Positions 28,264 to 46,560 of a stretch of DNA of 64,000 nucleotides are shown here, one piece after another. Below the pieces are notes generated by a model that had not been told where the DNA came from, searched no databases, and saw only the letters and a list, made by a program, of their open reading frames with translations. Position numbers and translations under genes: made by a program. Position 1 is the first letter of the stretch; every line of letters starts with the position of its first letter. The stretch covers positions 124,001-188,000 of IMG/VR virus record IMGVR_UViG_3300031857_000005; one strand, 5' to 3'.

Positions 28264-28264
28264 A

Positions 28265-28633: not shown

Positions 28634-28653
28634 AACAATAAATACTTAAATTT

Positions 28654-29400
28654 TTATTTTAACATTTCTTGAATTAATTGAAAATAGATTTTGCGGTATC
28701 TTTTAATTGATGATCTAATTTCTTTAGTTGTCAAATTTGTCATCTCCCTCAATTCAAATAAGATAACATTTTTATTAAATTTATTGTTTGATGTATCAAG
28801 AAATATGTCATTATAATTTTCAAACATATCGTATAACGCTTGTCCTAATTTTAATTCTTGTTCGGACATTTGTTTATCAGATAAAGTATCTAATAATTTA
28901 TCTAAAAATTTTTTAATAATATCTTCAGTGGTTATACTATAATCATCAATATGATATATCATATCTGGACTATGTTGTAAATCAGATGAAATATCTTCGT
29001 AAGAAATTTTTCTATTCATTTCTTTTTGGTCTTTCATGATTTGTCCCATCAAGTAATTTTTACATATGGTACCAAAATATGAATACGCCTTTTTTTCTTT
29101 TGATGGTTTAAATTTATCAATTTTAGTCATCAAAAATGAATGAGTATCTATATGGACTTCCTCAAAGTTCATATCTTTTCTGTACAATTTATATCTTCTA
29201 ATGATTGAAGATATCATCTTGTCTAAAGGAAGTTTTAAAAACTCATTATATATTTTATTTTTTTCTTCGAAAGTGTCTGCGGTTAGATACATTCTAACCG
29301 CATTTTCCTCTCTTTCGTCAAAATAATTATTAAGTTTTGGTTTTCTACCTTTCTTTTTTACTTCATCTAATGTGTTTGAATTTTTTTCATTATCATTCAT
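28654..29400 (-). CDS. Putative phage sigma factor (gp55/sigma70 region 2-like)
   Basis: DTHSFLMTKIDKFKPSKEKKAYSYFGTICKNYL resembles the region-2 'FDPEK...F.YF..I..N' segment of gp55-like late sigmas. Confidence 0.55.
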   Translation of the reverse strand: MNDNEKNSNTLDEVKKKGRKPKLNNYFDEREENAVRMYLTADTFEEKNKIYNEFLKLPLDKMISSIIRRYKLYRKDMNFEEVHIDTHSFLMTKIDKFKPSKEKKAYSYFGTICKNYLMGQIMKDQKEMNRKISYEDISSDLQHSPDMIYHIDDYSITTEDIIKKFLDKLLDTLSDKQMSEQELKLGQALYDMFENYNDIFLDTSNNKFNKNVILFELREMTNLTTKEIRSSIKRYRKIYFQLIQEMLK

Positions 29401-30242
29401 TAAACTTCTTGGGGTTCGTATTTTATTTCCCTCTGATTGATGTACATATACTCTTTCTTCGCGGAGTCAATCCAAAATCTAACCTCATCTTCGGTTAATC
29501 TATCATCACCGTTTTTATAATTCCAAAAAATAGATCCTTCTCTTAAGTTTGTATGTTTATAACCAATTCTTGGAATTGACATAAATCTTACTGAGTTATG
29601 TGTCATTCTTAAAAGAAACTCATAACCAAAAGTTAATTTAAATGTTGTTTTTAACATTCCATAATCAACAAACGATTCTTTTTTAATAGCCAATCCTGAT
29701 AATTGGAAGTTTTGATATGACAACAATGTTTCGTTAGTTAAAATACCCATCTCACTTGAGAAGTTTGCCGCAAATGTTGCCTCATTAGTAAACCCAACAA
29801 ATACTCCTTTTTCATCAACATCAACCACGATAGGTAAAAATGCGTCAACATTAGGATAAATGTTTGCATACTCTTTAAAGTTTTTAACCCATATATTTGA
29901 GAATTCATCATCAAACTCAAATATTGTTACCCATTTAGATGTTGCCACCTTAACCCCATGATTAACCTGAGAACAAAAATTAGGTTCTTTAGTCCACTCC
30001 TCAAATTTAACATTTAAATCCCCAAAATCGTATGACTTCAAATGATCACTTAAAAATGTATCATTAGTGTGTACAATAACAATCTCATCAAATTGTTCTT
30101 TTTGTAATTTTAATGAAGTAATTGCCTTATCAAGGTACTCCTCAAAAAATCCTGTTTTACCTGTTCTAATCGGTAATATAACCGAAATTGTATTCTTTTC
30201 CATATTATTCAATTGTTTCAAATTTAGATAGTTGATCTTCAA
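29400..30242 (-). CDS. Glycosyltransferase, GT2-like (GT-A)
   Basis: ISVILPI..., NFCSQVNHGVKVATSKWVTIFEFDD. Confidence 0.75.
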   Translation of the reverse strand: MKINYLNLKQLNNMEKNTISVILPIRTGKTGFFEEYLDKAITSLKLQKEQFDEIVIVHTNDTFLSDHLKSYDFGDLNVKFEEWTKEPNFCSQVNHGVKVATSKWVTIFEFDDEFSNIWVKNFKEYANIYPNVDAFLPIVVDVDEKGVFVGFTNEATFAANFSSEMGILTNETLLSYQNFQLSGLAIKKESFVDYGMLKTTFKLTFGYEFLLRMTHNSVRFMSIPRIGYKHTNLREGSIFWNYKNGDDRLTEDEVRFWIDSAKKEYMYINQREIKYEPQEV

Positions 30243-31263
30243 ACGATTCCAACCTTGTGTTTATCATACTTTCAAATAGATTGTTTACATCAGATTCAAA
30301 TTTTGTTTTATCTGAAAATTCCGATATTGTTTTATCCATTTCTTCAAAAATAATTGGATTAATATTATCCTCTAACCAATTTTGAATAAAGTCGGCAACA
30401 ACATCAACAAACATATTTTGATTGTTAATCCAAATTCCATTATTTTCATTCATCCATTCTGGTTGAAGGTTAGGTACTAATCCGACTACAGGGATTCCCA
30501 TTTTAAATGATTCAAGAGGGAAAGTTCCAAATCCACTCGTAGGGTCAATCCATACTGAACAAAAACTTTCTTTCATAGCATTTGCAAATTCAATTTCTGA
30601 CAATCCTCTCATATCTCTAAATGTAATCCATCTGTATTGTGGAAATTTAGCGTAGAATGCTTTAATCATATTTACAGTATCTCTTTGATCTCTTGAGTGA
30701 ACTGAAATAATTGTTTTTGGTGGAAATTTTTGTTTCTCAAATGATTCAGTAATAAATGGATTAACAACATCAATTGACACACCTCTCATCATTGACTCAA
30801 TCATTTCTTTTTGTCTGTCTGAAGTTGTAATACATTTATAAAAACCTAATTTTGTCCATGTATCCCCTGGATTTAAAGTTTCAAAAACATGATCATATGC
30901 CTGACAAATAACCACTTTACCACAAGGTAAATTTGTAATTTGATCCATAACAAACCCATATATTTCAGGTACAACAATAATATCTTCAGGAGATACCGCC
31001 AAATTAGTACCCTCAATTGCGTTATGAGGTAATTCCATATATTCCTCACCTAACCAACTTGATACTCCGAAATATTCAGGTTTTTCATGTAAGATTATAG
31101 AATTGAATCCATTGTTTTTAAGAGCCATCGCCATTTGATAAATGTATCTAACTGACGCTCTAGCATTACCTTTTGTGTCTTGTACCAAAAAATAAATTCG
31201 GGACGACTTGTCCTTCATGTTTTGGATTGACTTTTCAAGTTTTGATATTTGTTCTTGGTTCAT
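30205..31263 (-). CDS. Glycosyltransferase-like protein (GT-B)
   Basis: GGVRYIYQ-like ASVRYIYQMA, IIVVPEIY, GFGTFPLESFKMGIPVV; true start probably near 31263. Confidence 0.6.
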   Translation of the reverse strand: MNQEQISKLEKSIQNMKDKSSRIYFLVQDTKGNARASVRYIYQMAMALKNNGFNSIILHEKPEYFGVSSWLGEEYMELPHNAIEGTNLAVSPEDIIVVPEIYGFVMDQITNLPCGKVVICQAYDHVFETLNPGDTWTKLGFYKCITTSDRQKEMIESMMRGVSIDVVNPFITESFEKQKFPPKTIISVHSRDQRDTVNMIKAFYAKFPQYRWITFRDMRGLSEIEFANAMKESFCSVWIDPTSGFGTFPLESFKMGIPVVGLVPNLQPEWMNENNGIWINNQNMFVDVVADFIQNWLEDNINPIIFEEMDKTISEFSDKTKFESDVNNLFESMINTRLESFEDQLSKFETIE

Positions 31264-31267
31264 AATA

Positions 31268-31549
31268 TTAAAATTTATTTATTATTTTTTTTGTTAATAG
31301 TGTATTAAATGCGAATCTAAAAGGGACTGATGTTTCGTTTGAACTTAATGCCATTTTTTCATCAATTTCATCATGAGGATCCATTAAAATTTCCAACATA
31401 TATTTAATCATTTCATATTTAACAATATGTACTTTTGTTTGATTGTCAACATCTTCAGTTTCATCTGATTTTTTTTCATCATCAATTCTAGTGAATTCAT
31501 CAATTGCATCTAAATCAATGTAATAGTGCTCTCCAAAAATCTTAAACAT
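31268..31549 (-). CDS. Hypothetical protein
   Basis: ORF track. Confidence 0.7.
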   Translation of the reverse strand: MFKIFGEHYYIDLDAIDEFTRIDDEKKSDETEDVDNQTKVHIVKYEMIKYMLEILMDPHDEIDEKMALSSNETSVPFRFAFNTLLTKKIINKF

Positions 31550-31552
31550 AAT

Positions 31553-32224
31553 TTATAAAGTTTTAAATAATTCTGTAAATTCGGATAATGATTTTATCGT
31601 ATATTTAGAATTAATTTGTTTATTGTAGTCAGTTTCAAATTTAATAACAATTTTATTTGACGGATGGTTTAATAATAAGTCAGGATTAGATGTAAGTAAA
31701 ATGTCTATACTATCCCAAACAGTATTTTTTGTTTGATTACTGTAAAAAAATACTTTCTCAATTAAACACCCAAATTTGGATAGGAAAAACAATGAGGATG
31801 GTTTTGATTTACCTATTTCATCTGAAAAAATAATAATATCATTATCTTCTCTTAAATCCAAATATAAATCGTTAAGGTAGTTGAATGACATGGTTTCCGT
31901 TGACGGAGCGTGCCCAAACAATTCCATAGTATAGTCTTCATACATAAACGAATATAATTCTTCTTTAGATTTAAATGAAAAGTGTTTATCTAATTCTAAT
32001 GAATCAACATCACCTAAAATTTCGTATTTAAAATAATTAACATCAGTATTCTCATTCATTTCAACCAACTCATCAGTATCTCCCGAAAAAGTTAATTCAT
32101 AAGTCTTATCTACGGACTCCATTTGAATATCGTTAGATTCAATTAAATGTTTTTCATACAGTTGTTTAAACTTCCCAATAGTATCCCTCAATACACCATT
32201 AATCTCAATCCCTATTTTCTTCAT
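31553..32224 (-). CDS. HAD-like 5'(3')-nucleotidase-fold protein with degenerate motif I
   Basis: KIGIEINGVLRD (cf. IGIDIDGVL), YNKQ/NK tail pattern. Confidence 0.5.
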   Translation of the reverse strand: MKKIGIEINGVLRDTIGKFKQLYEKHLIESNDIQMESVDKTYELTFSGDTDELVEMNENTDVNYFKYEILGDVDSLELDKHFSFKSKEELYSFMYEDYTMELFGHAPSTETMSFNYLNDLYLDLREDNDIIIFSDEIGKSKPSSLFFLSKFGCLIEKVFFYSNQTKNTVWDSIDILLTSNPDLLLNHPSNKIVIKFETDYNKQINSKYTIKSLSEFTELFKTL

Positions 32225-32939
32225 ACTTATCCAAAATTTTACTAATTAATGGGTTTCTAACATTTTTAGCATTTCTAAAATCATAAACACCAATGTTATT
32301 AACATTTTTAAATCGTTGTAATGCGTCGTATAGTCCTGATTGTGTTTTATCTTTATATCTGTCTGTTTGTTCTAAATCTCCTGAAATAAAAAACTTACTA
32401 TTAAAACCAATTCTTGTAAGTAATAGTTTCATTTGATTTGGCGTTGAGTTTTGTGATTCTTCAAATATCAAAATTGAATTGTCAATATTCATACCTCTCA
32501 TATAAGCCAAGGCAAATACCTCAATAATGTCTGCCTTTTTTAACTCTTCTCTTGCCTCTTTACCGATGATTTTATTCAAAAGATAGTAAGAAGGGAATAT
32601 ATACGGATCCAATTTTTCCTCAAGATTTCCAGGTAAAGAACCTAACTTTTCTTCCGCTTCAACTGCGGGTCTAACAATAATTAATTTTTCATAACCATTG
32701 TTTGGATCCATTAATAAATCCACCGCCGCTTTCATTGAGATGTAACTTTTACCAACCCCTGCTGGACCTGAACAAATTGTAATTTCATTTTCTTTAAGGA
32801 GGTTATAATACTCTTCCTGATTTGGGGATAAGAATTTATTCTTTTGTTTTCTTTTGATTACTGAATTAATAAATTCTTTTTTTGAGAACGGTTTAGATTC
32901 TTGTTCCTCGTTCTGTTGTAATGGTTTTTTTCTAGTCAT
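32205..32939 (-). CDS. phoH: PhoH family ATPase
   Basis: SGPAGVGKSY, IIVRPAVE, LAYMRGMNIDNSILIFEESQN, LLTRIG, GDLEQTD. Confidence 0.95.
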   Translation of the reverse strand: MTRKKPLQQNEEQESKPFSKKEFINSVIKRKQKNKFLSPNQEEYYNLLKENEITICSGPAGVGKSYISMKAAVDLLMDPNNGYEKLIIVRPAVEAEEKLGSLPGNLEEKLDPYIFPSYYLLNKIIGKEAREELKKADIIEVFALAYMRGMNIDNSILIFEESQNSTPNQMKLLLTRIGFNSKFFISGDLEQTDRYKDKTQSGLYDALQRFKNVNNIGVYDFRNAKNVRNPLISKILDKYEENRD

Positions 32940-32944
32940 CTACT

Positions 32945-33856
32945 TTATTTTCTTATAATATTAAAATTATTTTCAAAGAATTCAATAGTTTCTTTTAACC
33001 CTTCATATATTGGTGTAAATTTAAAATCAGGTAAATATTTTTTTATTTTACTATTGTCACTTGGTTTTCTAAATTGTCCGTCAGGTTTTGTGGTGTCCCA
33101 TACTACCTCACCTTTAAAATTCATAAGTTCTATTATCATACCAACAACATCTTTAATTGATATTTCTTCTGATGTTGATAATATTATTGGTTCACTTTCG
33201 TCATATTCTTGTAATACCCATTCAGTTAATTTTGCAACATCTTTACTAAAAATAAATTCTCTTAAAGGATTACCACTACCCCAAATAGTAAATGGTGTTT
33301 TATTTTCTCTTGCTAAATAACATTTATGTATTAATGAAGGAATAACATGACCATTCACAATATTATAATTGTCATTCGGTCCATAAATATTACAGGGTAT
33401 AACTGATTTATAATTTAACCCATATTGTTCTCTGTATGATCTAATTTGTATATCAACCATTCTTTTTGCATATGCATAAGCATCATTTGATGTATGGGGA
33501 GGACCCATATGTATCTTTGATTCAGTAAGAGGGTATTCAACATTATCAGGAAAAATACAAGTAGATAAAAAAGAAACTAAATTTTTTACACCACATAATC
33601 TTGCTCCCTCAATAATGTTTGTATTCATCATAACATTATCATAAAAAAATTCTCCCTTATATCTCATATTGGCTCCAATCCCACCAACCTTTGCCGCACA
33701 ATGTATAACACTATCAAATCCTTTTAAAAGTAATGCATAAGTTTGATTTTTATCAACCAAATTGTAATCTTTAGAAGAAAAATTATAATACTTATCTCCA
33801 ATAAATTCAGAACCAACTAAACCATTTCCTCCTGTAACTAATATTTTATTTTCCAT
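32945..33856 (-). CDS. fcl: GDP-L-fucose synthase
   Basis: VTGGNGLVG, HCAAKVGGIGAN, FLSTCIFP, YAYAKR, PCNIYGPNDN, HVIPSLI, WGSGNPLREF, PDGQFRK. Confidence 0.93.
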   Translation of the reverse strand: MENKILVTGGNGLVGSEFIGDKYYNFSSKDYNLVDKNQTYALLLKGFDSVIHCAAKVGGIGANMRYKGEFFYDNVMMNTNIIEGARLCGVKNLVSFLSTCIFPDNVEYPLTESKIHMGPPHTSNDAYAYAKRMVDIQIRSYREQYGLNYKSVIPCNIYGPNDNYNIVNGHVIPSLIHKCYLARENKTPFTIWGSGNPLREFIFSKDVAKLTEWVLQEYDESEPIILSTSEEISIKDVVGMIIELMNFKGEVVWDTTKPDGQFRKPSDNSKIKKYLPDFKFTPIYEGLKETIEFFENNFNIIRK

Positions 33857-34820
33857 AATAATCTAACCAATATTGAACCATCTCATCTAACATAGACTCA
33901 AAAGTGTATTTAGGGTTCCACCCAAGTTTATTTCTTAGTTTAGAAGAATCTCCTTTTAAATCATGTAATTCTTCAGGTCTAAAATGTTTTTCATCAACAA
34001 CAACATAATCTCTAAAATCTAAATTTAATTTAGAAAAAGTATAATCACATAAATCCTTTACTGAGTGAGATATTCCTGTTGAACACACATAATCATCGGG
34101 ACTATCAGATTGTAACATCAACCACATTGCTTCAACATAATCTTTGGCGTGTCCCCAATCTCTGGTTGCATCAAGATTACCTAAATGTAAATTATCTTGT
34201 AAACCTAATTTAATTCTTACTGCTGCCTTTACGACTTTGTTAGTTACAAAATTTGTTCCTCTTCTTGGTGATTCGTGGTTGAACAGTATACCGTTCCATA
34301 TTTTCATTCCATAAGAGTTTCTGTAATTTCTACAAATATTGTATGAGAATACTTTTGCGCAACCGTATGGTGAAACTGGATTCATAGGGGTTATTTCTCG
34401 TTGATATCCATCCTCATCTATATTATTACCAAACATCTCAGAAGAAGATGCTTGATATATTTTTGAATGGGGGGATACCATTCTCACCGCTTCTAATAAA
34501 TTTAATGTACCTAATCCTGTTGCATTTGCGGTATATATTGGTTGATCAAAAGAAATTCTAACGTGAGATTGTGCAGCTAAATTATACACCTCATCAGGTT
34601 GTACTTTTTGTAAAACTCTAACTAATGATGCCATATCAGTTAGATCAGCATATTCTAAATTTATTTTATTTTCATCTCTTAAATTATTTATTCTTGATGA
34701 TTGTGTTTCAGAAACTGAATTTCTTTTTACTGTACCCCATACTTCATAACCTTTATTAACTAAAAGTTCTGCAAGATAAGATCCGTCCTGACCATTTATA
34801 CCTGTTATTAATGATTTCAT
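33846..34820 (-). CDS. gmd: GDP-mannose 4,6-dehydratase
   Basis: LITGINGQDGSYLAELL, YNLAAQSHVRISF, YQASSSEMFG, PVSPYGCAK, GILFNHESPRRGTNFVTNK, LGNLDATRDWGHAKDYV. Confidence 0.97.
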   Translation of the reverse strand: MKSLITGINGQDGSYLAELLVNKGYEVWGTVKRNSVSETQSSRINNLRDENKINLEYADLTDMASLVRVLQKVQPDEVYNLAAQSHVRISFDQPIYTANATGLGTLNLLEAVRMVSPHSKIYQASSSEMFGNNIDEDGYQREITPMNPVSPYGCAKVFSYNICRNYRNSYGMKIWNGILFNHESPRRGTNFVTNKVVKAAVRIKLGLQDNLHLGNLDATRDWGHAKDYVEAMWLMLQSDSPDDYVCSTGISHSVKDLCDYTFSKLNLDFRDYVVVDEKHFRPEELHDLKGDSSKLRNKLGWNPKYTFESMLDEMVQYWLDYYGK

Positions 34821-34823
34821 TAT

Positions 34824-36388: not shown

Positions 36389-36397
36389 ATATTAATT

Positions 36398-38558: not shown

Positions 38559-38562
38559 AATT

Positions 38563-38634
38563 TTATTTTTTAATGGTATTCATCAACAATTTTCCTTTTT
38601 CTGTTAATTCTATCATTTGTCTTTGTACTGTCAT
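38563..38634 (-). CDS. Tiny translationally coupled ORF (23 aa) or gene remnant
   Basis: MTVQRQMIELTEKGKLLMNTIKK; ATGA overlap with upstream stop; fills the gap exactly. Confidence 0.35.
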   Translation of the reverse strand: MTVQRQMIELTEKGKLLMNTIKK

Positions 38635-39997: not shown

Positions 39998-40003
39998 GAA
40001 CTT

Positions 40004-40627: not shown

Positions 40628-40633
40628 ATTAAA

Positions 40634-41218
40634 TTAAAACCATTGATGTAGATTAATTCCTAAAGAAGTGATTTGATTTACTAATTCATTTTTAGTTTGT
40701 TCATTTTCTTTTGGCATAAATCTTTCGTGAAACTCAACATAAAGTTCATTAATTTTTTTTATAGAACCTTTCTCCAGTAAGTCTCTAAGAACTGCAAATT
40801 CACTCCCCTCAATATCCATTTTACAAACAATATAATCATCATCATTATACTGTTGGAGAAAGTTACTTAATGAAATTGATTCTACCTCAACCTTTGTTTC
40901 ATATCCTGGATGAATAAATCCAATATTGTCAATTGACGACCCCCAACCATCAACATCTGATTGTCCATCGTGAGGTGAACCTGAACGACTTTTTCTGTGG
41001 TTTTCTTGGTTAAAAAATACTGTTCCATCCTCAATCCACACCGCTTTTTGATGTGGTGTAACATTGTACGGAATTTGTTTTATTCTTTCAATAATGTTAC
41101 AAGCTGGATTAGCTTCAAATGTGTGAATTTCAAAATCTTCAGTTACAATTTTTTTACCTATAAAATCTTTTAACCCCTCACATAAATGTGTTCCGCAATC
41201 TAAAAATACTTTTTTCAT
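40634..41218 (-). CDS. FkbM family methyltransferase
   Basis: FLDCGTHLCEG, TFEANP, CKMDIEGSEF, YVEFH. Confidence 0.85.
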   Translation of the reverse strand: MKKVFLDCGTHLCEGLKDFIGKKIVTEDFEIHTFEANPACNIIERIKQIPYNVTPHQKAVWIEDGTVFFNQENHRKSRSGSPHDGQSDVDGWGSSIDNIGFIHPGYETKVEVESISLSNFLQQYNDDDYIVCKMDIEGSEFAVLRDLLEKGSIKKINELYVEFHERFMPKENEQTKNELVNQITSLGINLHQWF

Positions 41219-41250
41219 ATTTTATTTTATTTTATTTTATTTAATATTAT

Positions 41251-41898
41251 CTACACTAATTTTGAGTGTTCTGGATAAATCATATCATCGTTCTCATTAA
41301 ATGCTTGACCAACAAATCTATTATTTTCTCTTTTAGATGGAAATGGTTTATTATTAAAAAACTCATCATGAACCACACAATTATCTTTAATTAACGGGTA
41401 AATAATATCTTTAAGAAAAAATTGATCTACTTGCCAAAAATTACCCTTAACATACTCATCAATTTTTGTTTTCATATTATGTATTGTTCCTTTTTTTGAT
41501 CCCCACATTCCACCAAGTATTTCTATGTTATGATACGGGTGATCTTTCATAATATGAAATCCTTTATCAGACTCTAACCATTCATCAACGGCATTTTTTT
41601 CTCTTTCATTTAATCTTGAGTCACAATCTCTAACAATTACAACATCAACATCATCTTCACTTGATGGGTAAAACCTCCAGAACATTCCTGTCCAATCACC
41701 ATCAGTGTCCATTAAAATAATTTCGGTGTTATCAAAACTATTTAATTTTTCTATAATTTCTGTCGGAACACTTTTTCCAACATAATATCTACATATCCAA
41801 TCAGGATAAATAGTTTTAGCAAGTTCAGAATTTTTAATCGCACCAATATTATATATTGGATTTGTTCCCCATAAACTAAAAGATATTATTTTTTTCAT
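41251..41898 (-). CDS. Glycosyltransferase-like protein
   Basis: ISFSLWG, MFWRF, VRDCDSR (DxD), ILGGMWG, DQFFL. Confidence 0.6.
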   Translation of the reverse strand: MKKIISFSLWGTNPIYNIGAIKNSELAKTIYPDWICRYYVGKSVPTEIIEKLNSFDNTEIILMDTDGDWTGMFWRFYPSSEDDVDVVIVRDCDSRLNEREKNAVDEWLESDKGFHIMKDHPYHNIEILGGMWGSKKGTIHNMKTKIDEYVKGNFWQVDQFFLKDIIYPLIKDNCVVHDEFFNNKPFPSKRENNRFVGQAFNENDDMIYPEHSKLV

Positions 41899-42557
41899 AA
41901 ACCAAAATTTTTTTCTTTTCGTTTAATATAAACATTTCTATCAATAGTGTCAAACTTTACATTATCAATATGAACAAAATCTCTTTTACCAAATCCAGCG
42001 TCAGGATGTTCATGTCTAATAATTATATCATTAAAATATGTTTGTTTGTTTAATAAGTTTGCAACATCCATAAATTCATTATCCGCCCATAACGATGTGT
42101 AGTCAGGATGATAAATATAATTAAATCTTTCGTAATATTTTTTACCTAAGATACATAAAGTATTCAACCTATTACCTTGATTTCCATCGTTAAACCATAA
42201 AACCCCGTCAGTGTTAGGATATAGTTCAGTCATTTTATTTCTGATTATATTATCATACCCTTTAACTTTTGGTATCATGTCATCAGAGGCAATTAAAATA
42301 ATATCCCAATCACCAATTGTTATATCTCTATTAACCGCATTTATTTTATTTTTACTAAAACCAAGATTGTACTTTAAATTTTTATAAGTTTTTAATTTTT
42401 CTAAAACATTATGATTGTTCATAGACTCGTCGTCTGTATCTATTGTAATTTGAAACTCAACATTATCAATGTTTTCCGCTAATTGGTAATATATGTCTAA
42501 AACGTTAAAAAATTTATCTCTCCTACCTCTTGTTGGGAATTTAATTAGTATTTTCAT
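41895..42557 (-). CDS. GT2-like glycosyltransferase
   Basis: IKFPTRGR, NKINAVNR, IASDDMIP, WADNEF. Confidence 0.7.
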   Translation of the reverse strand: MKILIKFPTRGRRDKFFNVLDIYYQLAENIDNVEFQITIDTDDESMNNHNVLEKLKTYKNLKYNLGFSKNKINAVNRDITIGDWDIILIASDDMIPKVKGYDNIIRNKMTELYPNTDGVLWFNDGNQGNRLNTLCILGKKYYERFNYIYHPDYTSLWADNEFMDVANLLNKQTYFNDIIIRHEHPDAGFGKRDFVHIDNVKFDTIDRNVYIKRKEKNFGL

Positions 42558-43935
42558 TTTTAAAAATATTATTTTTATTCATTATATAATTATATAATTC
42601 TTGTGTGTTTTTATTTGCCTCAGTAGATACGGTACCATCTTTCTCATGGTGAAAATATGTGAATAGAGGTTTTGGTATTCTTTTACCAACAAAACCATTG
42701 TTCATCATTCTAACCCATAAATCATAATCTTCCCATCCTTTCATTTCTTCGTCATATCCTCCACAAATATCAAATGATTCTCTTGTAAACATTGAACAAT
42801 TCACAATGAATGGTCCTTGTATCAATCTTTCTTTTGTCCATTCAGGACGATTCTCAATTCCACTCATTTGTCCAATGTGATTAGTATCGCAATATACGGG
42901 ACTGATATTGTTATCTTTTTTAATAATATTCACACAAGTTTGAATATATTCTGATGAAATCATGTCGTCAGAATCTAAAGGTAAGATATAAACACCGTTT
43001 GAGTTTTTTATTCCGTTATTTCTGGCATTTGCCGGACCTCCATTTTCTTGATTAATAATTTTAATATTTGGATGATTGGATAATGAACTCAATTTATTTA
43101 AGACGTATTCATCCGTGGATCCATCATTAACAATAATCAACTCAAAATTTTTGTATGTGGAATTAAAAACGGACTCAATTGATTTATGAAACATTTTACC
43201 ATAATTATGAACCGGCATAATTACCGAGACTAAAGGTAAATTTTTATTTGGGTTTAATACTGGTAAGTTGTTCTCTAAAATGTTAGGTAGATGAGGTTTG
43301 TAATTTTCAATAAAAACTTTCCTATTTTTATCCCATTGTTCATTTGTCATGCCAATTGATAAATGAGTTATTGGAATATTGGAAACTACCCCAACCTTAA
43401 CACCGTTAATATGGTTCTCAAATGAAAATGTTGTATCATAAAAATGGAAACCTTCAACTGATTCATTAAATGGTTTAACAATTGTTTTTTTATTTATCAT
43501 CATAAATACACCATCAATAATTACGGTGTCGATGATTTTACCCCCAAAAGGTTCATTATAGGATGAAAGCCATTTTTTACCATTATGTTGATGATAAACT
43601 TGTCCTACCATTTCTGAACTAATCTCCCACCACATACCTGACGAAGGGTAGTATCTTGTTCCTGCAACACCCAATATCCCAAATTCAGGTTTCTTGGTAA
43701 AATGTTCTATAACTCTTTTAGCCCAATACCCCTTTTCAAAAATGATATCATCATGACATAAAACAACGATATCATTTAGACTTTCGGATAAAATTTCATT
43801 ATAAACTACTGACAATGATTTTTCACCATTATTAATTTTCTCAATGATTTGTACATCATTAATCCCACAAGTTTCCTTAATATGTTCAATAAACTTTGGT
43901 TTTGTTGATTTTGTACTATACCCAATTGTAATCAT
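42541..43935 (-). CDS. Two-domain glycosyltransferase (N-terminal GT-A plus C-terminal GT2)
   Basis: VLCHDDI, FHFYDTTFS; LVSVIMPVHN, IIVNDGSTD, GPANARNNG, LDSDD, EDYDLW. Confidence 0.88.
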   Translation of the reverse strand: MITIGYSTKSTKPKFIEHIKETCGINDVQIIEKINNGEKSLSVVYNEILSESLNDIVVLCHDDIIFEKGYWAKRVIEHFTKKPEFGILGVAGTRYYPSSGMWWEISSEMVGQVYHQHNGKKWLSSYNEPFGGKIIDTVIIDGVFMMINKKTIVKPFNESVEGFHFYDTTFSFENHINGVKVGVVSNIPITHLSIGMTNEQWDKNRKVFIENYKPHLPNILENNLPVLNPNKNLPLVSVIMPVHNYGKMFHKSIESVFNSTYKNFELIIVNDGSTDEYVLNKLSSLSNHPNIKIINQENGGPANARNNGIKNSNGVYILPLDSDDMISSEYIQTCVNIIKKDNNISPVYCDTNHIGQMSGIENRPEWTKERLIQGPFIVNCSMFTRESFDICGGYDEEMKGWEDYDLWVRMMNNGFVGKRIPKPLFTYFHHEKDGTVSTEANKNTQELYNYIMNKNNIFKNENTN

Positions 43936-44546
43936 ATCCCCGTACTTCCGAAACCATTTGAGTTTCTATCTTTATTGTTTATATTATCTACTTTGTTAAA
44001 CTTTATCCATTTACCACACGCTACAGGAGAAAAAACGGCTTGAGCAATTTTTTGTCCTTTTTTGATTGTTGTTGGTAAATTATTTGCGTTAAAAATAATA
44101 ACCTGTATTTCTCCCGTGTATCCTTGATCAACAGTTCCTGGCGAGTTCAATACCATAATACCATCTTTAAGTGCTAACCCACTCTTTGATCTTACTTGAA
44201 GTTCGTACTGTTCAGGAATATCAATATGTAATCCTGTTGGCACTAACTTCCTACCAAACGGAGGAACTTCAATCTCCTCAGTTGAGTATAAATCAAAACC
44301 AGAATCTGTAAAATATGCGTATTGAGGATCAACTGAATCGGGACGACTAAAAGAATAATTCACATTAATCTTTTGTTCGTATCTTTCCATATCTCTCTCT
44401 AACTCGGCAATATCAATTCCAAACTCATCAATAATTGCTTGATAATTCGGTTCTTCATCTCCAAATACTTCATCAAGTTCTTGGAGTTGTTTTAATAAAT
44501 CCTCAAGACTTTCCTCATCGTTATTATCACCTAATGTAAAACTCAT
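43932..44546 (-). CDS. dut: Trimeric dUTPase with acidic N-terminal extension
   Basis: DSGFDL, VRSKSGL, NSPGTVDQGYTGEI, KIAQAV, RNSNGFGSTG. Confidence 0.95.
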   Translation of the reverse strand: MSFTLGDNNDEESLEDLLKQLQELDEVFGDEEPNYQAIIDEFGIDIAELERDMERYEQKINVNYSFSRPDSVDPQYAYFTDSGFDLYSTEEIEVPPFGRKLVPTGLHIDIPEQYELQVRSKSGLALKDGIMVLNSPGTVDQGYTGEIQVIIFNANNLPTTIKKGQKIAQAVFSPVACGKWIKFNKVDNINNKDRNSNGFGSTGI

Positions 44547-45244
44547 TTTAATTCTTTTAATTTTTTAATTGCGTCAACTAAAACAACAACATCCTTTTCA
44601 CAATATTCAGATATTTCTTTTAATTTTTGTTCTTCCCAATAAGCACTATGAACTTTATCTCCAGTTACTTCCCCATCTTTTGGTGTTGGTATATCAAGAC
44701 AAGAACACATCAAATCTAATGAACCAATTGATGTATAAGCTCCGTATTGCCAAATTTCTTTGGTATCAATGGCTTTAACTTCCCAAGGTTTTGTATCATA
44801 TGAAGGAAGAAGTTTTGATGGCATAATACCATTAATAATCATTCTTTTTGCCATCATAGGAATATCAAAATTCTTTAAATTATGCCCACAAAGATAAAAA
44901 TCTAATTTTTGACATCTGTCTAAAAGATTTCTTACTTGAAGTAGTAATTCTTTTTCATCGTCTCCTGAAAATGTTTGTTTTTTTATGTCTCCGTTATCCA
45001 TAACAAATGCCATAGACACACAAACAATTTTTGCAAATTCAGGAACAAGAGCTGCTCGTTTTTTAAACACCTCATCCTTAGTTAATCCATTATCTTCAGG
45101 AAACCTTTTTTGAAACCAATCAAAATATTTGTCAAACTGATTTGCAATACTTGGACTAAATCTTTCACAAGATTCATAATCAGGACATCCACCAACCGTT
45201 TCAATATCCAAGAATAAAATTTTTGTAATAGGAATATTAATCAT
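44543..45244 (-). CDS. PolB-like 3'-5' exonuclease (DEDDy)
   Basis: LFLDIETV, GHNLKNFDIP, YCEKDV. Confidence 0.88.
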   Translation of the reverse strand: MINIPITKILFLDIETVGGCPDYESCERFSPSIANQFDKYFDWFQKRFPEDNGLTKDEVFKKRAALVPEFAKIVCVSMAFVMDNGDIKKQTFSGDDEKELLLQVRNLLDRCQKLDFYLCGHNLKNFDIPMMAKRMIINGIMPSKLLPSYDTKPWEVKAIDTKEIWQYGAYTSIGSLDLMCSCLDIPTPKDGEVTGDKVHSAYWEEQKLKEISEYCEKDVVVLVDAIKKLKELK

Positions 45245-45247
45245 AAA

Positions 45248-46465
45248 TTATTTAATTAAAGATTTGTAAAATTCTGCTCGTGTTTTTGTTACATTTTTAA
45301 GATCATATCTATCTTTAACAGTTTCATATAATCTTTCACCCATATCAACAACCATATTTGGGTTGTCAACCAATTTTTTAACATATTTTGCCCAATCTCC
45401 ATGATTTCTATTTTTATCCACTAATAAAGCGTTACCATCAGTAAAATTACCATTATTAAGTGAATGTTTTAAATCAATGGTATAAGGTCCAACATTAGAT
45501 GCGATTAATGCTTTTTTATAGAATCCAGCTTCAATAACCTTAAGTTGTGACTTCATTCGGTTAAATACATGATCAACAATTGGTGCCAATGAAATATCAA
45601 ACTTAGAGTAGTTCTTGGCATATGATGTGGTAGGTTTTGTCCAAACCCTTACATAGTTTTCATTTTCCCAACCAAAATATTCTTCATCGTTAAATTTATC
45701 CAAAAATGTTTTATAGTTTGGTGTAATGATTTTATAATTGTTAGTAAATATACTCTCATATTTAACCCAAACAGTTTCTTCAGGTCTAATTGGTCTTCTT
45801 GTCTCTTGTCCTGTCTGTTTGTTTATTTCAGTCACAGTTCCTCTTGTATCAAAACCACAAACATAATATTGTAATTTATCTTGGATTGGTTTTAACTTTG
45901 ACACCATTCCATCTAAAAGTTTTAAATCGTGAAGGTGAGATGATCCCCCTAACCAACCAACTCTAATTTTTTCTGATGGTAATGTTGGTTGATTAAATTG
46001 TTCTTCGTTTGGATTAATTGCATTTGGTAAAACAAGAACATTTTTATTAAATTTTCTTATTTCATCGGCGAATAATTCTGTCGTTGTTGTGACATACGAA
46101 CAAACTTTCATGTTTGCCGTTATCTTTTCGTGTATTTTATTTGTTACAATTAATTGATGTATTGGGTGTTCCTTTGTTGGTAACCAATAATCATCAATAT
46201 CCATAATAACAACAATACCATTTGATTTTAATTTTTCTATTAATGATGGAGTTTCTTCATAGTTATTCCCAATATTTCTATGGAAATGAACAATTTGATA
46301 CTGACCCCAATATTTGTCATCATCAACTTTTGGTTGGAAGTCTATGTCAACATGAAAATCATCAGAATATAAATTTTGTAACATTACATGGGGGTCAACG
46401 GATCTGTACTTACCAACACCTGAACCATCAGATGGGAGTACTAATACTTTAATTTTTTCTTTCAT
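45248..46465 (-). CDS. Glycosyltransferase, GT4/GT1-like (GT-B)
   Basis: DIDDYW, VLPNAI, VGWLGGSSH, DISLAP, KSQLKVIEAG...ASNVGPY. Confidence 0.85.
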   Translation of the reverse strand: MKEKIKVLVLPSDGSGVGKYRSVDPHVMLQNLYSDDFHVDIDFQPKVDDDKYWGQYQIVHFHRNIGNNYEETPSLIEKLKSNGIVVIMDIDDYWLPTKEHPIHQLIVTNKIHEKITANMKVCSYVTTTTELFADEIRKFNKNVLVLPNAINPNEEQFNQPTLPSEKIRVGWLGGSSHLHDLKLLDGMVSKLKPIQDKLQYYVCGFDTRGTVTEINKQTGQETRRPIRPEETVWVKYESIFTNNYKIITPNYKTFLDKFNDEEYFGWENENYVRVWTKPTTSYAKNYSKFDISLAPIVDHVFNRMKSQLKVIEAGFYKKALIASNVGPYTIDLKHSLNNGNFTDGNALLVDKNRNHGDWAKYVKKLVDNPNMVVDMGERLYETVKDRYDLKNVTKTRAEFYKSLIK

Positions 46466-46523
46466 AAATTAGTTATATAATAATCCAATTATAATCATTA
46501 ATTTATGATATATCAATAAATAA

Positions 46524-46560
46524 AAAACAAAAAACCCCCACTTTTGGTGGAGGTTTAGCC
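46524..46560 (-). terminator. Intrinsic terminator separating the upstream genes from the glycan operon
   Basis: Minus strand: aaacctccac-caaaa-gtggggttt followed by T-rich tract. Confidence 0.6.

What the first reader, a model, noticed from the sequence alone, without database searches (positions are those of the whole stretch)
29400..46465. 17-kb phage glycan-building operon: ~11 GT-like genes, 4 FkbM methyltransferases and GDP-fucose synthesis
Seen in sequence: a tightly coupled minus-strand run with GT2-like, GT4-like, Fringe/GT31-like, exostosin/GT47-like and other GT-like genes, four FkbM-type O-methyltransferases, and gmd+fcl. No flippase, polymerase (Wzx/Wzy), ABC exporter or undecaprenyl-phosphate initiating transferase is present, and most ORFs look soluble. 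A TATTTAT motif lies ~50 nt upstream of the first gene (46516-46522). Inference: this looks like a cytoplasmic, lipid-carrier-free pathway making a methylated, fucosylated glycan, resembling the autonomous capsid/fibre glycosylation of chloroviruses and mimiviruses. The likely targets are the Ser/Thr/Asn-rich fibres or the capsid. Host-surface remodelling is the alternative.
Basis: partly seen in the sequence, partly recalled or inferred. Interest (0 to 1): 0.78.

Follow-up and report, generated by a model that had tools for sequence, protein, structure and literature searches.

The report
Hypervariable glycan gene island, jumbo phage
A 304-kb freshwater jumbo phage carries three conserved sugar-transferase genes plus an 11-kb swappable cassette of sugar-building genes. 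No gene for membrane export of the glycan was found, so the phage probably builds a methylated, fucose-type glycan inside the cell, on a target that is still unknown.

Summary
The gene-level observation holds. Window 29400-46465 is a tightly packed minus-strand run with 10 supported glycosyltransferase (GT) genes, one more unassigned candidate, three clear and one borderline FkbM methyltransferases, and a GMD plus fcl-like pair. No polytopic membrane protein, initiating transferase, Wzx, Wzy or ABC exporter was found in the 304-kb genome.

It is not a uniform glycan operon. It also holds a PolB-type exonuclease, a dUTPase, PhoH and two unknown genes. Comparison with 80 related viral contigs splits it in two:
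- A conserved backbone with three core GTs: GT405, u352 and GT280.
- An 11-kb accessory island (32945-43935) between dUTPase and PhoH.

In relatives that interval ranges from 42 bp to more than 8.7 kb. Island content turns over almost completely between phages whose flanking genes are 80-99% identical. Only the first gene (PF13712-type) is constant. None of 412 island ORFs has three or more hydrophobic segments.

Best reading (about 0.4): cytoplasmic glycosylation of a phage protein, probably a virion protein, with a conserved core and a variable outer glycan. Remodelling of host envelope glycans through host lipid-carrier machinery is a serious rival (about 0.3). DNA glycosylation is unlikely. 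The target remains untested.

The parts
46516..46522 (-). TATTTAT promoter-like motif, 57 nt from motif start to the ATG of the first gene
   Evidence: Read directly. Genome-wide it occurs in 73 of 179 upstream regions against 6.5 expected, usually 10-29 nt before the ATG, with no -35 partner. Extended to TATTTATA it is the reverse complement of the T4 late promoter TATAAATA.
46532..46556 (-). Intrinsic terminator hairpin that ends the upstream unit (WYL-u198)
   Evidence: 10-bp stem with 5 GC pairs followed by a T run. The same terminator-then-TATTTAT layout recurs across the genome.
45248..46465 (-). GT405: core GT-B/GT4-like glycosyltransferase
   Evidence: phrog_7162 E 6e-48. Profile hit to GT4 chains E 3e-5. 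AF2 pLDDT 93.7 with Foldseek E 7e-13 to GlgM, PglA, MshA and ManT. Homologues lie in 114 viral stretches at 34-100% identity.
44543..45244 (-). PolB-type 3'-5' exonuclease (backbone gene, not a glycan gene)
   Evidence: PF10108 E 4.6e-15. Conserved in 32 related loci.
43932..44546 (-). dUTPase, the conserved left anchor of the island
   Evidence: PF00692 E 1.7e-26. TIGR00576 scores 140.6 bits, above its cut-off. Nucleotide homology to close relatives stops between about 43940 and 43440, from the dUTPase end into the first ~500 nt of the next gene.
32945..43935 (-). Accessory hypervariable glycan island: 17 genes, GC falling to 0.23
   Evidence: The dut-phoH interval in relatives ranges from 42 bp to more than 8.7 kb. 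Median island gene-set Jaccard is 0.07-0.21 when GT405 is 80-99% identical. GC profile.
42541..43935 (-). Two-domain GT (PF13712 N-terminal, GT2 C-terminal), the constant first gene of the island
   Evidence: PF13712 E 1.5e-29 and PF00535 E 4.9e-32. A PF13712-type gene is present in 47 of 47 island-bearing loci. Its C-terminal partner domain varies; it is GT4 in L165.
41895..42557 (-). GT220: phage-type glycosyltransferase, part of the semi-conserved inner module
   Evidence: phrog_14945 E 8e-21. 61% identical in L165.
41251..41898 (-). u215: GT-A (GT8-like) glycosyltransferase from a very large family with no Pfam model
   Evidence: AF2 pLDDT 78.5. Foldseek hits glycogenin, PBCV-1 A64R, the Skp1 galactosyltransferase and LgtC at E about 1e-6 and TM about 0.5. 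6345 cluster representatives. Fused to GT2, TPR, GT41 or GT10 in multidomain members.
40634..41218 (-). FkbM-type methyltransferase
   Evidence: PF05050 E 4.5e-11, 43.6 bits.
40004..40627 (-). Fringe-like (GT31) glycosyltransferase
   Evidence: PF02434 E 5.1e-10, 39.6 bits against a cut-off of 21.
39308..39997 (-). u229: probable GT-associated Rossmann-like domain (DUF6165/GT9-like)
   Evidence: The nearest Atlas clusters are viral. The model of the nearest cluster matches DUF6165 (giant viruses) and GT9/GT2 multidomain viral proteins at TM 0.7-0.9. This evidence is indirect.
38631..39311 (-). u226: GT-A fold protein
   Evidence: Its own Atlas model (pTM 0.85) matches Nucleotid_trans, GT8, RgpF and GT2 clusters at TM 0.64-0.71.
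37782..38558 (-). u258a: RXYLT1_C/exostosin-like GT
   Evidence: PF24785 E 4.9e-4, below cut-off. Several of 698 homologues carry PF24785.
37006..37782 (-). u258b: unassigned candidate enzyme
   Evidence: Only 10 homologues, with no Pfam or PDB match and no profile relation to u215.
35759..37009 (-). Two FkbM methyltransferases (36398-37009 and 35759-36388)
   Evidence: PF05050 E 4.6e-19 and 1.7e-14.
34824..35762 (-). Borderline FkbM-like C-terminal half with an unknown N-terminal domain of about 160 aa
   Evidence: PF05050 scores 22.7 bits, equal to its cut-off. TIGR01444 scores 27.3 bits against 37.7.
33846..34820 (-). GDP-mannose 4,6-dehydratase
   Evidence: PF16363 E 2.5e-123. TIGR01472 scores 404 bits against 415. 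90% identical in L165 and 80% in L042. The closest cellular relatives are Saprospiraceae MAGs at 70-73%.
32945..33856 (-). GDP-L-fucose synthase-like epimerase/reductase
   Evidence: Best NCBIfam hit is NF047922, E 2e-66, but at 224 bits against a 500-bit cut-off. Adjacent gmd and fcl genes (64% identity for fcl) lie on a Saprospiraceae contig.
32205..32939 (-). PhoH-like ATPase, the conserved right anchor of the island
   Evidence: PF02562 E 2.8e-62. Nucleotide homology to relatives resumes at about 32900-32960.
31268..32224 (-). Two conserved backbone ORFs of unknown function (u223 and u93)
   Evidence: Conserved in 12-17 loci, including relatives with no island. No family match.
30205..31263 (-). 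u352: core GT4-like glycosyltransferase
   Evidence: Weak PF00534 match. Atlas feature score 0.98-1.0 to GT4-bearing clusters, and the nearest model has TM 0.7-0.85 to GT4 families. Present in relatives with no island.
29400..30242 (-). GT280: core GT2 glycosyltransferase
   Evidence: PF00535 E 4e-9, 37.1 bits. There is a weak best NCBIfam hit to the SunS peptide S-glycosyltransferase, 24 bits, far below cut-off. Present in relatives with no island.
28654..29400 (-). u248: sigma-factor-like protein (T4 gp55-like), last gene before the next intergenic TATTTAT at 28638-28644
   Evidence: TIGR02937 E 8e-4. The top profile hits in the PDB are SigA (E 0.012) and T4 gp55 (E 0.042). Next promoter motif located.

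Best explanation
The phage runs a two-tier glycosylation system in the host cytoplasm.

- Core tier: three GTs kept across the whole phage clade (GT405 and u352, both GT4-like, and GT280, a GT2). They are inferred to lay down a conserved inner glycan on a conserved phage-encoded acceptor, most probably a virion surface protein such as a Ser/Thr-rich fibre or a capsid or decoration protein.
- Variable tier: the cassette between dUTPase and PhoH. It always starts with a PF13712-type GT, and in several relatives also holds GT220-like and u215-like genes. It is inferred to extend that core with a strain-specific outer glycan.
- In this phage, the phage GMD and fcl-like enzymes would convert host GDP-mannose to a GDP-6-deoxyhexose, most likely GDP-L-fucose. 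About seven island GT genes would add sugars and three or four FkbM enzymes would O-methylate them.

Shown here: the enzyme families and folds, the conserved-core and variable-cassette architecture, and that no membrane assembly or export gene was found.
Inferred: the acceptor, the order of steps, fucose as the product, and the timing.
For: 1. The searches found no polyprenol-phosphate initiating transferase, Wzx, Wzy or O-antigen ligase, and no ABC transporter above cut-off, with positive controls. No ORF in the 304-kb genome has more than 4 hydrophobic segments. None of 412 island ORFs in 47 related loci has 3 or more.
2. The core GTs persist in relatives that lack the island altogether (L044, L047-51, L054, L078-79). 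GT405 is found down to 34% identity in contigs up to 366 kb. This fits a conserved phage-intrinsic acceptor.
3. The repertoire matches known autonomous viral protein glycosylation. PBCV-1 has GMD plus GMER, soluble GTs and a methyltransferase domain, and its glycan has a conserved core with variable decoration (PMC5408694). A relative's island (L248) has an aminosugar set of DegT, WbqC, an acetyltransferase and a methyltransferase.
4. Several island GT families are virus-dominated in the Atlas (93-100% viral for u226 and u352). The u229 neighbours are 83-100% viral, and the nearest family (DUF6165) is from giant viruses.
5. The u215 fold resembles cytoplasmic protein-directed GT-A enzymes: glycogenin, PBCV-1 A64R and the Skp1 galactosyltransferase. 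Its family is fused to TPR repeats in 9 of 41 and to GT41 (O-GlcNAc transferase family) in 3 of 41 multidomain members.
6. Many large Ser/Thr-rich (25-32%) presumptive structural proteins exist, for example 51619-56160, which matches virion and tail-spike PHROGs.
7. The run from GT405 to u248 has one promoter-like motif at its head and no internal terminator or intergenic TATTTAT.
8. Virion glycosylation by phage GTs has precedent in mycobacteriophages (Freeman 2023, as cited in PMC12619734).
Against: - There is no direct evidence for any acceptor.
- Soluble GTs are equally typical of Und-PP-linked assembly, and the host could provide the initiator, flippase and ligase.
- The flanking genes are for nucleotide metabolism and transcription (exonuclease, dUTPase, PhoH, a sigma-like gene), not structural genes.
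- The fold matches of GT405 and u215 are generic, with TM about 0.5-0.6. The top GT4 hits act on small molecules, soluble glycans or lipid-linked acceptors.
- Cassette hypervariability is explained at least as naturally by adaptation to variable host surface glycans.
- No fucosyltransferase family was recognised in this genome.
- No RNA run was listed as holding the stretch, so timing is unknown.
Confidence: 0.4

Rival explanations
1. Host envelope remodelling. The phage GTs and methyltransferases act at the inner face of the host membrane on host polyprenol-PP-linked intermediates (O-antigen, capsule, or the general Bacteroidota O-glycan). Host initiating transferase, flippase and ligase or oligosaccharyltransferase then move the altered glycan to the cell surface. 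The effect would be to block superinfection or to stop progeny adsorbing to debris. The cassette varies because host surface glycans vary.
For: - Cassette organisation between conserved flanks, with low GC (0.23-0.28), is like bacterial O-antigen and CPS loci.
- The closest cellular gmd-fcl pair is in Saprospiraceae (Bacteroidota) at 70-73% and 64%, so at least that module is host-like.
- The GT2 domain of 42541-43935 best matches EPS, colanic-acid and teichuronic-acid GTs, all far below cut-off.
- This is the explanation proposed for the 24 'LPS' genes of cyanomyovirus P-SSM2 and the 22 cell-wall genes of S-SCSM2R (PMC1079782; PMC12801897).
- From my own knowledge: Bacteroidota O-glycans contain fucose and O-methyl sugars and have a phylum-conserved core.
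Against: - No island gene with three or more hydrophobic segments appears in 47 relatives (no Wzx, Wzy, Gtr-type or acyltransferase-like polytopic protein), although such genes are usual in seroconverting phages.
- Three core GTs are conserved over a clade that presumably spans many host strains.
- Several island GT families are virus-dominated rather than recent bacterial captures.
- About 10 GTs plus 4 methyltransferases is a whole glycan, not a modification.
Confidence: 0.3
2. DNA hypermodification. The GTs build an oligosaccharide on a modified base of phage DNA to evade restriction. Precedents are glucosyl-hmC in T4 and the roughly 1-kDa oligosaccharide-like thymidine substituent of phage YerA41.
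For: - The GT genes sit among nucleotide-metabolism genes (exonuclease, dUTPase, PhoH) and next to a gp55-like sigma gene. From my memory of the T4 map, agt lies next to gene 55.
- YerA41 sets a precedent for an oligosaccharide-like substituent on T, with several GT genes (PMC9023294).
- The moraphage paper lists DNA glucosylation among possible roles of its core GTs.
- GT405 homologues sit in a 4-GT cluster near the DNA polymerase in Phapecoctavirus.
Against: - The genome has a single thymidylate-synthase-family gene. It keeps the uracil-specifying Asn, and is 56-59% identical to ordinary thymidylate synthases of Bacillus phages and closest to B. subtilis ThyA. It is not closest to T4 dCMP hydroxymethylase. 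No hydroxymethyl-pyrimidine handle is therefore evident.
- GT405 matches GT4 enzymes; T4 alpha/beta-glucosyltransferases are not among the top 50 fold matches.
- Four O-methyltransferases plus a GDP-deoxyhexose supply and about 10 GTs would be unprecedented for a DNA base.
- The genome assembles near-identically from 15 or more ordinary metagenome runs.
Confidence: 0.07
3. Another cytoplasmic product. One option is a soluble methylated polysaccharide, like mycobacterial methylmannose and methylglucose polysaccharides. Another is glycosylation of non-structural phage or host proteins or small molecules, used for takeover or defence evasion.
For: - Among the best fold matches of GT405 are soluble-acceptor GT4 enzymes. 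These include the methylmannose-polysaccharide mannosyltransferase, GlgM, MshA and BshA.
- Alternating GT and methyltransferase genes, with no membrane genes found, fit a carrier-free soluble product.
Against: - No selective reason is evident for cassette-level hypervariability of an internal product.
- The fold matches are generic.
- I could find no precedent in phages.
Confidence: 0.12

Closest known systems
Chlorovirus PBCV-1 autonomous capsid glycosylation (GMD, GMER, A064R, A111/114R and others)
   Same: Virus-encoded GMD plus an epimerase/reductase. Several soluble GT-A and GT-B enzymes with no signal peptide or TM segment. A methyltransferase for sugar O-methylation. The glycan has a conserved core and variable outer part across strains (PMC5408694). 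The u215 fold matches the A64R GT domain among others.
   Different: PBCV-1 is a eukaryotic giant virus with its GT genes scattered around the genome, and the glycan on capsid protein Vp54 is experimentally shown. Here the genes are clustered as a cassette in a tailed phage, and the acceptor is unknown. Sequence identity is only 15-17%.
Mycobacteriophage virion glycosylation (Che8-type; Freeman et al. 2023, cited in PMC12619734)
   Same: Phage-encoded GTs modify virion proteins in the bacterial cytoplasm.
   Different: From my recollection of that work, those phages carry only a few GT genes and target the C-termini of capsid and tail-tube proteins. Here there are about 10 GTs, 3-4 methyltransferases and a nucleotide-sugar pathway in a T4-like jumbo phage, with no experimental data. 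I could not read the paper itself.
'LPS' / cell-wall gene clusters of large T4-like cyanophages (P-SSM2, S-SCSM1, S-SCSM2R)
   Same: Large lytic T4-like phages with 13-24 GT, epimerase and synthase genes in clusters that are present or absent between close relatives. Their function is unproven.
   Different: Those phages infect cyanobacteria and have different GT families. Some include export or Kdo genes such as pgaA and kdsA/B. No fixed cassette site with a constant anchor gene has been described for them.
Bacterial O-antigen and capsule loci
   Same: A low-GC cassette of GTs, sugar-modifying enzymes and nucleotide-sugar genes between conserved flanking genes, with near-complete content turnover between close relatives.
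   Different: The defining membrane components (initiating phosphotransferase, Wzx/Wzy or ABC transporter) were not found here, and none of the island ORFs in 47 related islands has three or more hydrophobic segments.
Moraphages (Perez-Hernandez et al. 2025, PMC12619734)
   Same: Freshwater jumbo phages of 200-307 kb with T4-like structural genes. PhoH is among the widely shared VOGs, and four widely shared orthogroups are putative GTs. Bacteroidota hosts are predicted. This 304-kb genome fits that description.
   Different: That paper does not describe the dut-phoH cassette, the FkbM enzymes or the GDP-fucose genes. I could not compare sequences with their genomes. This genome has no DnaK, which only 8 of their 25 genomes carry.
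T4 alpha/beta-glucosyltransferases and YerA41-type DNA glycans
   Same: Phage GTs placed among DNA-metabolism genes. An oligosaccharide on DNA has precedent.
   Different: No hydroxymethylase is evident. GT405 is GT4-like rather than alpha/beta-GT-like.

Membership tests
Wzx/Wzy-dependent O-antigen or capsule locus | Polyprenol-phosphate initiating transferase (PF02397 or PF00953) | tested here: not met
   No match at E<=1 in the whole 304-kb genome. Controls were positive in 11 and 13 of 14 genomes.
Wzx/Wzy-dependent O-antigen or capsule locus | Flippase (Wzx, PF01943) and polymerase or ligase (Wzy_C, PF04932) | tested here: not met
   No match. No ORF has more than 4 hydrophobic segments. 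None of 412 island ORFs in relatives has 3 or more.
Wzx/Wzy-dependent O-antigen or capsule locus | Variable cassette of GTs and nucleotide-sugar genes between conserved flanks | tested here: met
   dut and phoH are the flanks. The interval ranges from 42 bp to more than 8.7 kb. Median Jaccard is 0.07-0.21 at 80-99% backbone identity.
ABC-transporter-dependent polysaccharide pathway | ABC ATPase plus ABC-2 permease | tested here: not met
   PF00005 gives only sub-threshold matches of 14.7 bits or less against a cut-off of 25, all in unrelated ORFs. No polytopic permease candidate exists.
Autonomous viral protein glycosylation (chlorovirus type) | Virus-encoded soluble GTs, nucleotide-sugar enzymes (GMD and GMER) and a sugar methyltransferase | tested here: met
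   compared with PMC5408694.
Autonomous viral protein glycosylation (chlorovirus type) | Glycan covalently attached to a virion protein | not testable with these tools
   This needs virion glycoproteomics or lectin blots. No isolate exists and no RNA or protein data were found.
Phage DNA glycosylation (T4 type) | dCMP or dUMP hydroxymethylase that provides the attachment group | tested here: not met
   The single TS-family gene keeps Asn, is closest to B. subtilis ThyA, and is 56-59% identical to Bacillus phage thymidylate synthases. A dUMP hydroxymethylase cannot be fully excluded from sequence alone.
Phage DNA glycosylation (T4 type) | GT related to T4 alpha- or beta-glucosyltransferase | tested here: not met
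   The top 50 fold matches of GT405 include no T4 alpha- or beta-glucosyltransferase; they are mostly GT4 enzymes such as GlgM, PglA, MshA and BshA. The u352 neighbours are GT4 clusters.
GDP-L-fucose de novo pathway | GDP-mannose 4,6-dehydratase | tested here: met
   PF16363 E 2.5e-123. TIGR01472 scores 404 bits, just under the 415-bit equivalog cut-off.
GDP-L-fucose de novo pathway | GDP-4-keto-6-deoxymannose 3,5-epimerase/4-reductase (Fcl/GMER) | tested here: inconclusive
   The best hit is NF047922 (Fcl), E 2e-66, but at 224 bits against a 500-bit cut-off. A different GDP-6-deoxyhexose product is possible.
GDP-L-fucose de novo pathway | A fucosyltransferase to use the product (GT10, GT11 or similar) | tested here: not met
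   No GT10 or GT11 match in the island ORFs. The relative L165 has a GT11 gene next to gmd. One of the unassigned GTs may do the job here.
FkbM methyltransferase family (PF05050) | Score above the Pfam gathering threshold | tested here: met
   69.6, 54.8 and 43.6 bits. The fourth scores 22.7 bits, equal to the cut-off, and covers the C-terminal half only. The substrate (sugar O-methylation) is inferred.
Moraphage lineage | Clustering with the 25 described genomes in MCP, TerL and PolB trees | not tested
Only the descriptive features agree: size, freshwater origin, T4-like MCP, PhoH and core GTs.

The most novel reading that the evidence does not exclude
A widespread clade of freshwater jumbo phages carries its own serotype locus. 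This is an O-antigen-like, cassette-swapping gene island at a fixed site. With three clade-wide core GTs, it would decorate the virion with a conserved-core, variable-outer glycan of methylated deoxyhexose type. The glycan would be built entirely in the bacterial cytoplasm without a lipid carrier. That would be the bacterial-virus counterpart of chlorovirus and mimivirus autonomous glycosylation, and would imply strong diversifying selection on phage particle surfaces in lakes.
Probability: 0.33. Interest if true: 0.85.

Novelty: new variant of a known kind. Interest (0 to 1): 0.62.

Why it matters
Large glycan gene sets in lytic phages have been noted since 2005, for example in the cyanophage P-SSM2. 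Their target has not been established, and core GTs were recently listed for moraphages without analysis.

This case adds an organisation that can be tested. There is a fixed cassette site (dUTPase to PhoH), a constant anchor gene and clade-wide core GTs. Cassette content turns over almost completely between near-identical backbones, and no island gene with three or more hydrophobic segments was seen in any relative.

If the acceptor is the virion, phages would have serotype-like surface glycan diversity. That bears on adsorption, on grazing and decay of viruses in lakes, and on phage engineering. If the acceptor is the host envelope, this would be an unusually large conversion system for a lytic phage, one that parasitises host lipid-carrier machinery.

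The island is also a rich source of virus-specific GT families, including the u215 family with more than 6000 sequence clusters and no Pfam model.

Tried and rejected
- **Megablast of the 17 kb against cultured phages:** no match.
- **DNA-glycosylation lead:** I looked for a hydroxymethylase and found only an ordinary-looking thymidylate synthase. GT405's fold is GT4-like, not like T4 alpha/beta-GT.
- **Expression data:** no RNA run was listed as holding the stretch.
- **Genes downstream in the same strand block (18970-28633):** Pfam, PHROGs and PDB profiles gave nothing, so I could not show they are structural.
- **u258b (37006-37782):** homologue search, PDB profile search and hhalign against u215 were all negative.
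- **The 381-aa ORF after the capsid gene:** by eye it looked like a secreted protein with a T9SS C-terminal domain. Pfam and NCBIfam did not support this, so I dropped it as evidence.
- **DnaK as a moraphage marker:** absent. This is uninformative, because only 8 of the 25 moraphages have it.
- **Literature on function of GT405 homologues in Phapecoctavirus:** none found.
- **Complex prediction:** not used. An enzyme-substrate pairing between a GT and a virion protein is unlikely to be modelled reliably, and a negative result would say nothing.
- **Timing from promoters:** TATTTAT precedes both small and large genes, and the sigma-like gene lies in the same unit, so early versus late cannot be decided.

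Full report
**Context**

The window is bases 124001-188000 of a single 304,365-bp IMG/VR virus record that CheckV rates complete. GC content is 31%. It is a tailed phage. The window holds a large terminase, a portal and a T4 gp23-type major capsid protein. The nearest capsid relatives are at about 41-43% identity: an uncultured 484-kb phage, Microcystis phage Mel-JY01 and Flavobacterium phage immuto.

More than 598 viral contigs encode a capsid protein related to this one; the best 80 are 76-100% identical. The island sequence itself recurs near-identically in at least 15 lake or freshwater metagenome runs from several studies. So this is an abundant freshwater lineage.

Size, habitat, T4-like structural genes, a widely shared PhoH and several core GTs all fit the 'moraphages' described in 2025 (PMC12619734). 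I could not compare sequences with those genomes.

The closest cellular relatives of the phage gmd-fcl pair are in Saprospiraceae MAGs, at 70-73% for gmd and 64% for fcl. The next best are 58% or less. A Bacteroidota-type bipartite promoter pattern is also enriched upstream of genes, 8 observed against 1.0 expected. Both point to a Bacteroidota host, by inference.

**The observation**

Window 29400-46465 contains 22 minus-strand ORFs with intergenic distances of -38 to +72 nt.

Ten ORFs have support as GTs:

| ORF | Assignment |
|---|---|
| 45248-46465 | GT4-like GT-B |
| 42541-43935 | two GT-A domains, PF13712 + PF00535 |
| 41895-42557 | PHROG glycosyltransferase |
| 41251-41898 | GT8-like GT-A fold |
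| 40004-40627 | Fringe/GT31 |
| 39308-39997 | DUF6165/GT9-like, indirect |
| 38631-39311 | GT-A fold |
| 37782-38558 | RXYLT1_C/exostosin-like |
| 30205-31263 | GT4-like |
| 29400-30242 | GT2 |

One further ORF, 37006-37782, stays unassigned.

- Three FkbM domains are clear and a fourth sits exactly at the Pfam threshold.
- GMD is unambiguous. The neighbouring reductase is most like GDP-L-fucose synthase but falls well below the equivalog cut-off.
- The phage has no NTP_transferase gene, so GDP-mannose must come from the host.
- All GT2 and FkbM matches in the genome lie in this run, and its proteins have no paralogues elsewhere.

**Missing membrane machinery**

- Bac_transf, Glycos_transf_4, Polysacc_synt (Wzx) and Wzy_C gave no match anywhere in the genome. 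ABC_tran gave only sub-threshold matches. Each search recovered the family in 11-14 of 14 control genomes.
- A hydropathy scan found at most one borderline hydrophobic segment in any ORF of the run. Only six ORFs genome-wide have 3-4 hydrophobic segments.

**Anatomy from comparison**

I fetched 80 viral loci around homologues of the first gene, GT405, and mapped all window ORFs onto them.

The conserved order is WYL protein, u198, GT405, exonuclease (absent in some), dUTPase, [variable interval], PhoH, u223, u93, u352, GT280, u248, u122, u640.

- In nine loci dUTPase is followed by PhoH after only 42-98 bp. In others the interval is 4.9-8.4 kb, or more than 8.7 kb. In this phage it is 11 kb.
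- Nucleotide homology with close relatives (L005 at about 85%, L009 at about 76-80%) stops between about 43940 and 43440, from the dUTPase end into the first ~500 nt of the next gene, and resumes at 32900-32960. The variable island is therefore 32945-43935, 17 genes.
- The 412 island ORFs from 47 loci fall into 145 clusters, 76 of them singletons.
- Pairs of loci whose GT405 is 99% or more identical share the whole island.
- At 90-99% GT405 identity the median Jaccard index of island gene clusters is 0.07. At 80-90% it is 0.21.
- The one constant is the first gene. A PF13712-type GT is present in 47 of 47 islands, with a partner domain that changes: GT2 here, GT4 in L165.
- GT220 and u215 form a semi-conserved inner module, 61% and 71% identical in L165.
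- The gmd-fcl pair is a mobile module. It is 80-90% identical in L042 and L165, whose GT405 is only 48% and 70% identical.
- Representatives of 69 island clusters carry GT2, FkbM, GT7, GT61, other methyltransferases, CmcI-type rhamnosyl O-methyltransferase, DegT aminotransferase, WbqC and UDP-glucose dehydrogenase.
- Individual relatives add GT11, GT25, a hexapeptide acetyltransferase, PhyH and GT32-like domains.
- No island ORF in any relative has three or more hydrophobic segments.
- The centre of the island has the lowest GC of the window, 0.23.

An O-antigen-like cassette has been inserted at a fixed site.

**Transcription signals**

It lies directly after a good terminator hairpin at 46556-46532.
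- The motif is the dominant upstream signal of the genome. It occurs in 73 of 179 upstream regions against 6.5 expected, mostly 10-29 nt before the start codon and often right after a terminator.
- It has no conserved -35 partner. Extended to TATTTATA it is the reverse complement of the T4 late promoter TATAAATA.
- Within the minus-strand block, intergenic copies lie before 48340-49326, GT405, 28265-28633, 23093-24562 and 20386-21021. No good terminator lies between 46532 and the convergent one at about 18957-18990.
- The predicted unit headed by GT405 therefore runs through GT280 to u248 (28654-29400).
- u248 looks like a sigma factor. TIGR02937 scores E 8e-4, and the top PDB profile hits are SigA and T4 gp55.
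- Because the putative late-type sigma lies in the same unit, and TATTTAT precedes both small and very large genes, I cannot assign early or late timing.
- Early expression would not exclude a virion target in any case, because PBCV-1 GTs are early genes.

**What it most likely does**

These points are solid:
- The enzymes are of the kinds that build a multi-sugar, O-methylated glycan using a GDP-6-deoxyhexose.
- No signal peptide or transmembrane segment was detected by the hydropathy scan.
- Three GTs are clade-wide and the rest is a swappable cassette.
- The phage brings no membrane assembly or export component that I could detect.

The acceptor is not shown. I favour a phage protein, most probably on the virion, at a confidence of about 0.4, for these reasons:
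- The core GTs are conserved across a clade that must span many hosts. This fits a conserved phage-intrinsic acceptor.
- The gene repertoire mirrors the documented autonomous systems of chloroviruses. These have GMD plus GMER, soluble GTs, a methyltransferase, and a glycan with a conserved core and a variable outer part.
- Several island GT families are virus-dominated, and one resembles a giant-virus domain.
- The u215 family is fused to TPR and GT41 modules elsewhere. Its fold resembles cytoplasmic protein-directed GT-A enzymes, including PBCV-1 A64R.
- The genome encodes many large proteins with 25-32% Ser/Thr. The one at 51619-56160 matches virion-structural and tail-spike PHROGs.

All of these points are circumstantial.

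**Rivals**

Host-envelope remodelling through host lipid-carrier machinery is a serious alternative, at about 0.3.
- Soluble GTs are also the rule in Und-PP-linked assembly.
- Cassette hypervariability and low GC are hallmarks of loci that track variable surface glycans.
- The gmd-fcl module is host-like.
- This is the standing hypothesis for cyanophage 'LPS' clusters.
- Against it, no membrane gene appears in any of 47 islands, and the core GTs are conserved clade-wide.

DNA glycosylation deserved a check.
- The neighbours are nucleotide-metabolism genes, and an oligosaccharide-like thymidine substituent exists in phage YerA41.
- The only TS-family gene looks like an ordinary thymidylate synthase.
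- GT405 is GT4-like.
- I put this rival at about 0.07.

A soluble cytoplasmic methylated polysaccharide, or a non-structural acceptor, takes most of the remainder.

**Comparison with what is known, and novelty**

Phage and giant-virus glycan gene sets are a known kind. Examples are PBCV-1, mimivirus, the mycobacteriophages, P-SSM2 and S-SCSM2R, and the moraphage paper already lists core GT orthogroups.

I did not find the following described:
- the fixed dUTPase-PhoH cassette site
- the constant PF13712-type anchor gene
- the near-total content turnover between near-identical backbones
- the lack of any island gene with three or more hydrophobic segments
- the combination of several FkbM methyltransferases with a host-like GDP-fucose module

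I therefore rate it a new variant of a known kind, of moderate to high interest. Its value depends on the acceptor, which needs experiments.

**Limits**

- No RNA data could be found, and the read-laying run failed.
- Whole genomes of relatives could not be fetched, so cassette type could not be tested for co-variation with structural-gene alleles.

Noticed in passing
28654-29400 (-): A conserved 248-aa ORF translationally coupled to the GT2 gene looks like a sigma factor. TIGR02937 scores E 8e-4, and the top PDB profile hits are SigA and T4 gp55. It may be the factor that reads the TATTTAT(A) promoters.
   Followed up: partly
whole genome; in the window e.g. 49341-49347, 46516-46522, 28638-28644, 24577-24583, 21037-21043 (minus strand): TATTTAT(A) is a genome-wide single-element promoter-like motif, found in 73 of 179 upstream regions against 6.5 expected. 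It usually lies 10-29 nt before the ATG and often directly after a terminator, which implies very short leaders. A Bacteroidota-type TTTG-N17-21-TAnnTTTG pattern is also enriched (8 against 1.0 expected).
   Followed up: partly
20386-21021 and 21054-23090 (-): A 211-aa and a 678-aa ORF (20-22% Ser/Thr) share an 85-aa C-terminal domain at 63% identity. The 678-aa ORF also matches an ORF about 116 kb away (genome 263486-264937). This looks like a fibre or receptor-binding module family, but no database match was found.
   Followed up: partly
14300-16177 (+): The major capsid protein is 625 aa. The best-scoring stretch to the gp23-type PHROG profile covers only residues 344-602, and relatives align in two pieces. 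So it carries large extra regions compared with T4 gp23, which could be a surface-exposed insertion.
   Followed up: no
16247-17392 (+): The 381-aa ORF right after the capsid gene starts with a signal-peptide-like hydrophobic segment. By eye its C-terminus resembles a T9SS sorting domain. Pfam and NCBIfam did not confirm this.
   Followed up: partly
26341-28263 (-): A conserved 640-aa ORF downstream of the core GTs has three hydrophobic segments at residues 419-525 and no database match. It could be a tape-measure-like or membrane-active protein. The moraphage paper reports that no tape measure gene was identified.
   Followed up: partly
51619-56160 (+): A 1513-aa protein with 26% Ser/Thr has 7-9 repeated matches to virion-structural and tail-spike PHROGs. 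It is a repeat-built fibre or spike and an obvious candidate glycan acceptor.
   Followed up: no
48340-49326 (-) versus 48353-48814 (+) and 49142-51598 (+): Gene calls conflict at the divergent junction. The 328-aa minus-strand ORF is the real gene, since a 326-aa gene is called there in relative L248. The 153-aa plus-strand ORF with three hydrophobic segments is probably spurious. The 818-aa plus-strand ORF probably starts at a later ATG.
   Followed up: partly
47187-47591 (-): A WYL-domain protein (PF13280, E 4e-5) is conserved in 59 related loci just upstream of the GT405 unit. It may be a regulator.
   Followed up: no
41251-41898 (-): u215 belongs to a very large family with no Pfam model: 6345 cluster representatives at 50% identity. 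It is common as a domain in proteins up to 1851 aa, and JGI labels several members 'protein O-GlcNAc transferase'.
   Followed up: yes
L169 (Saprospiraceae MAG contig), 4989-7085: The closest cellular gmd-fcl pair lies on a 120-kb Saprospiraceae contig, at 70% and 64% identity. A 4-kb contig binned as Saprospira, from a sample that also yields related phage contigs, has a 73% match and 32% GC. It may be mis-binned phage DNA.
   Followed up: partly
L167 (Escherichia phage Mt1B1_P17), 5663-8807: GT405 homologues at about 28% identity occur twice per genome in cultured Phapecoctavirus and related coliphages. They sit within a four-GT cluster near the DNA polymerase, and no function is reported. 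This could be a tractable model for the core GT.
   Followed up: partly
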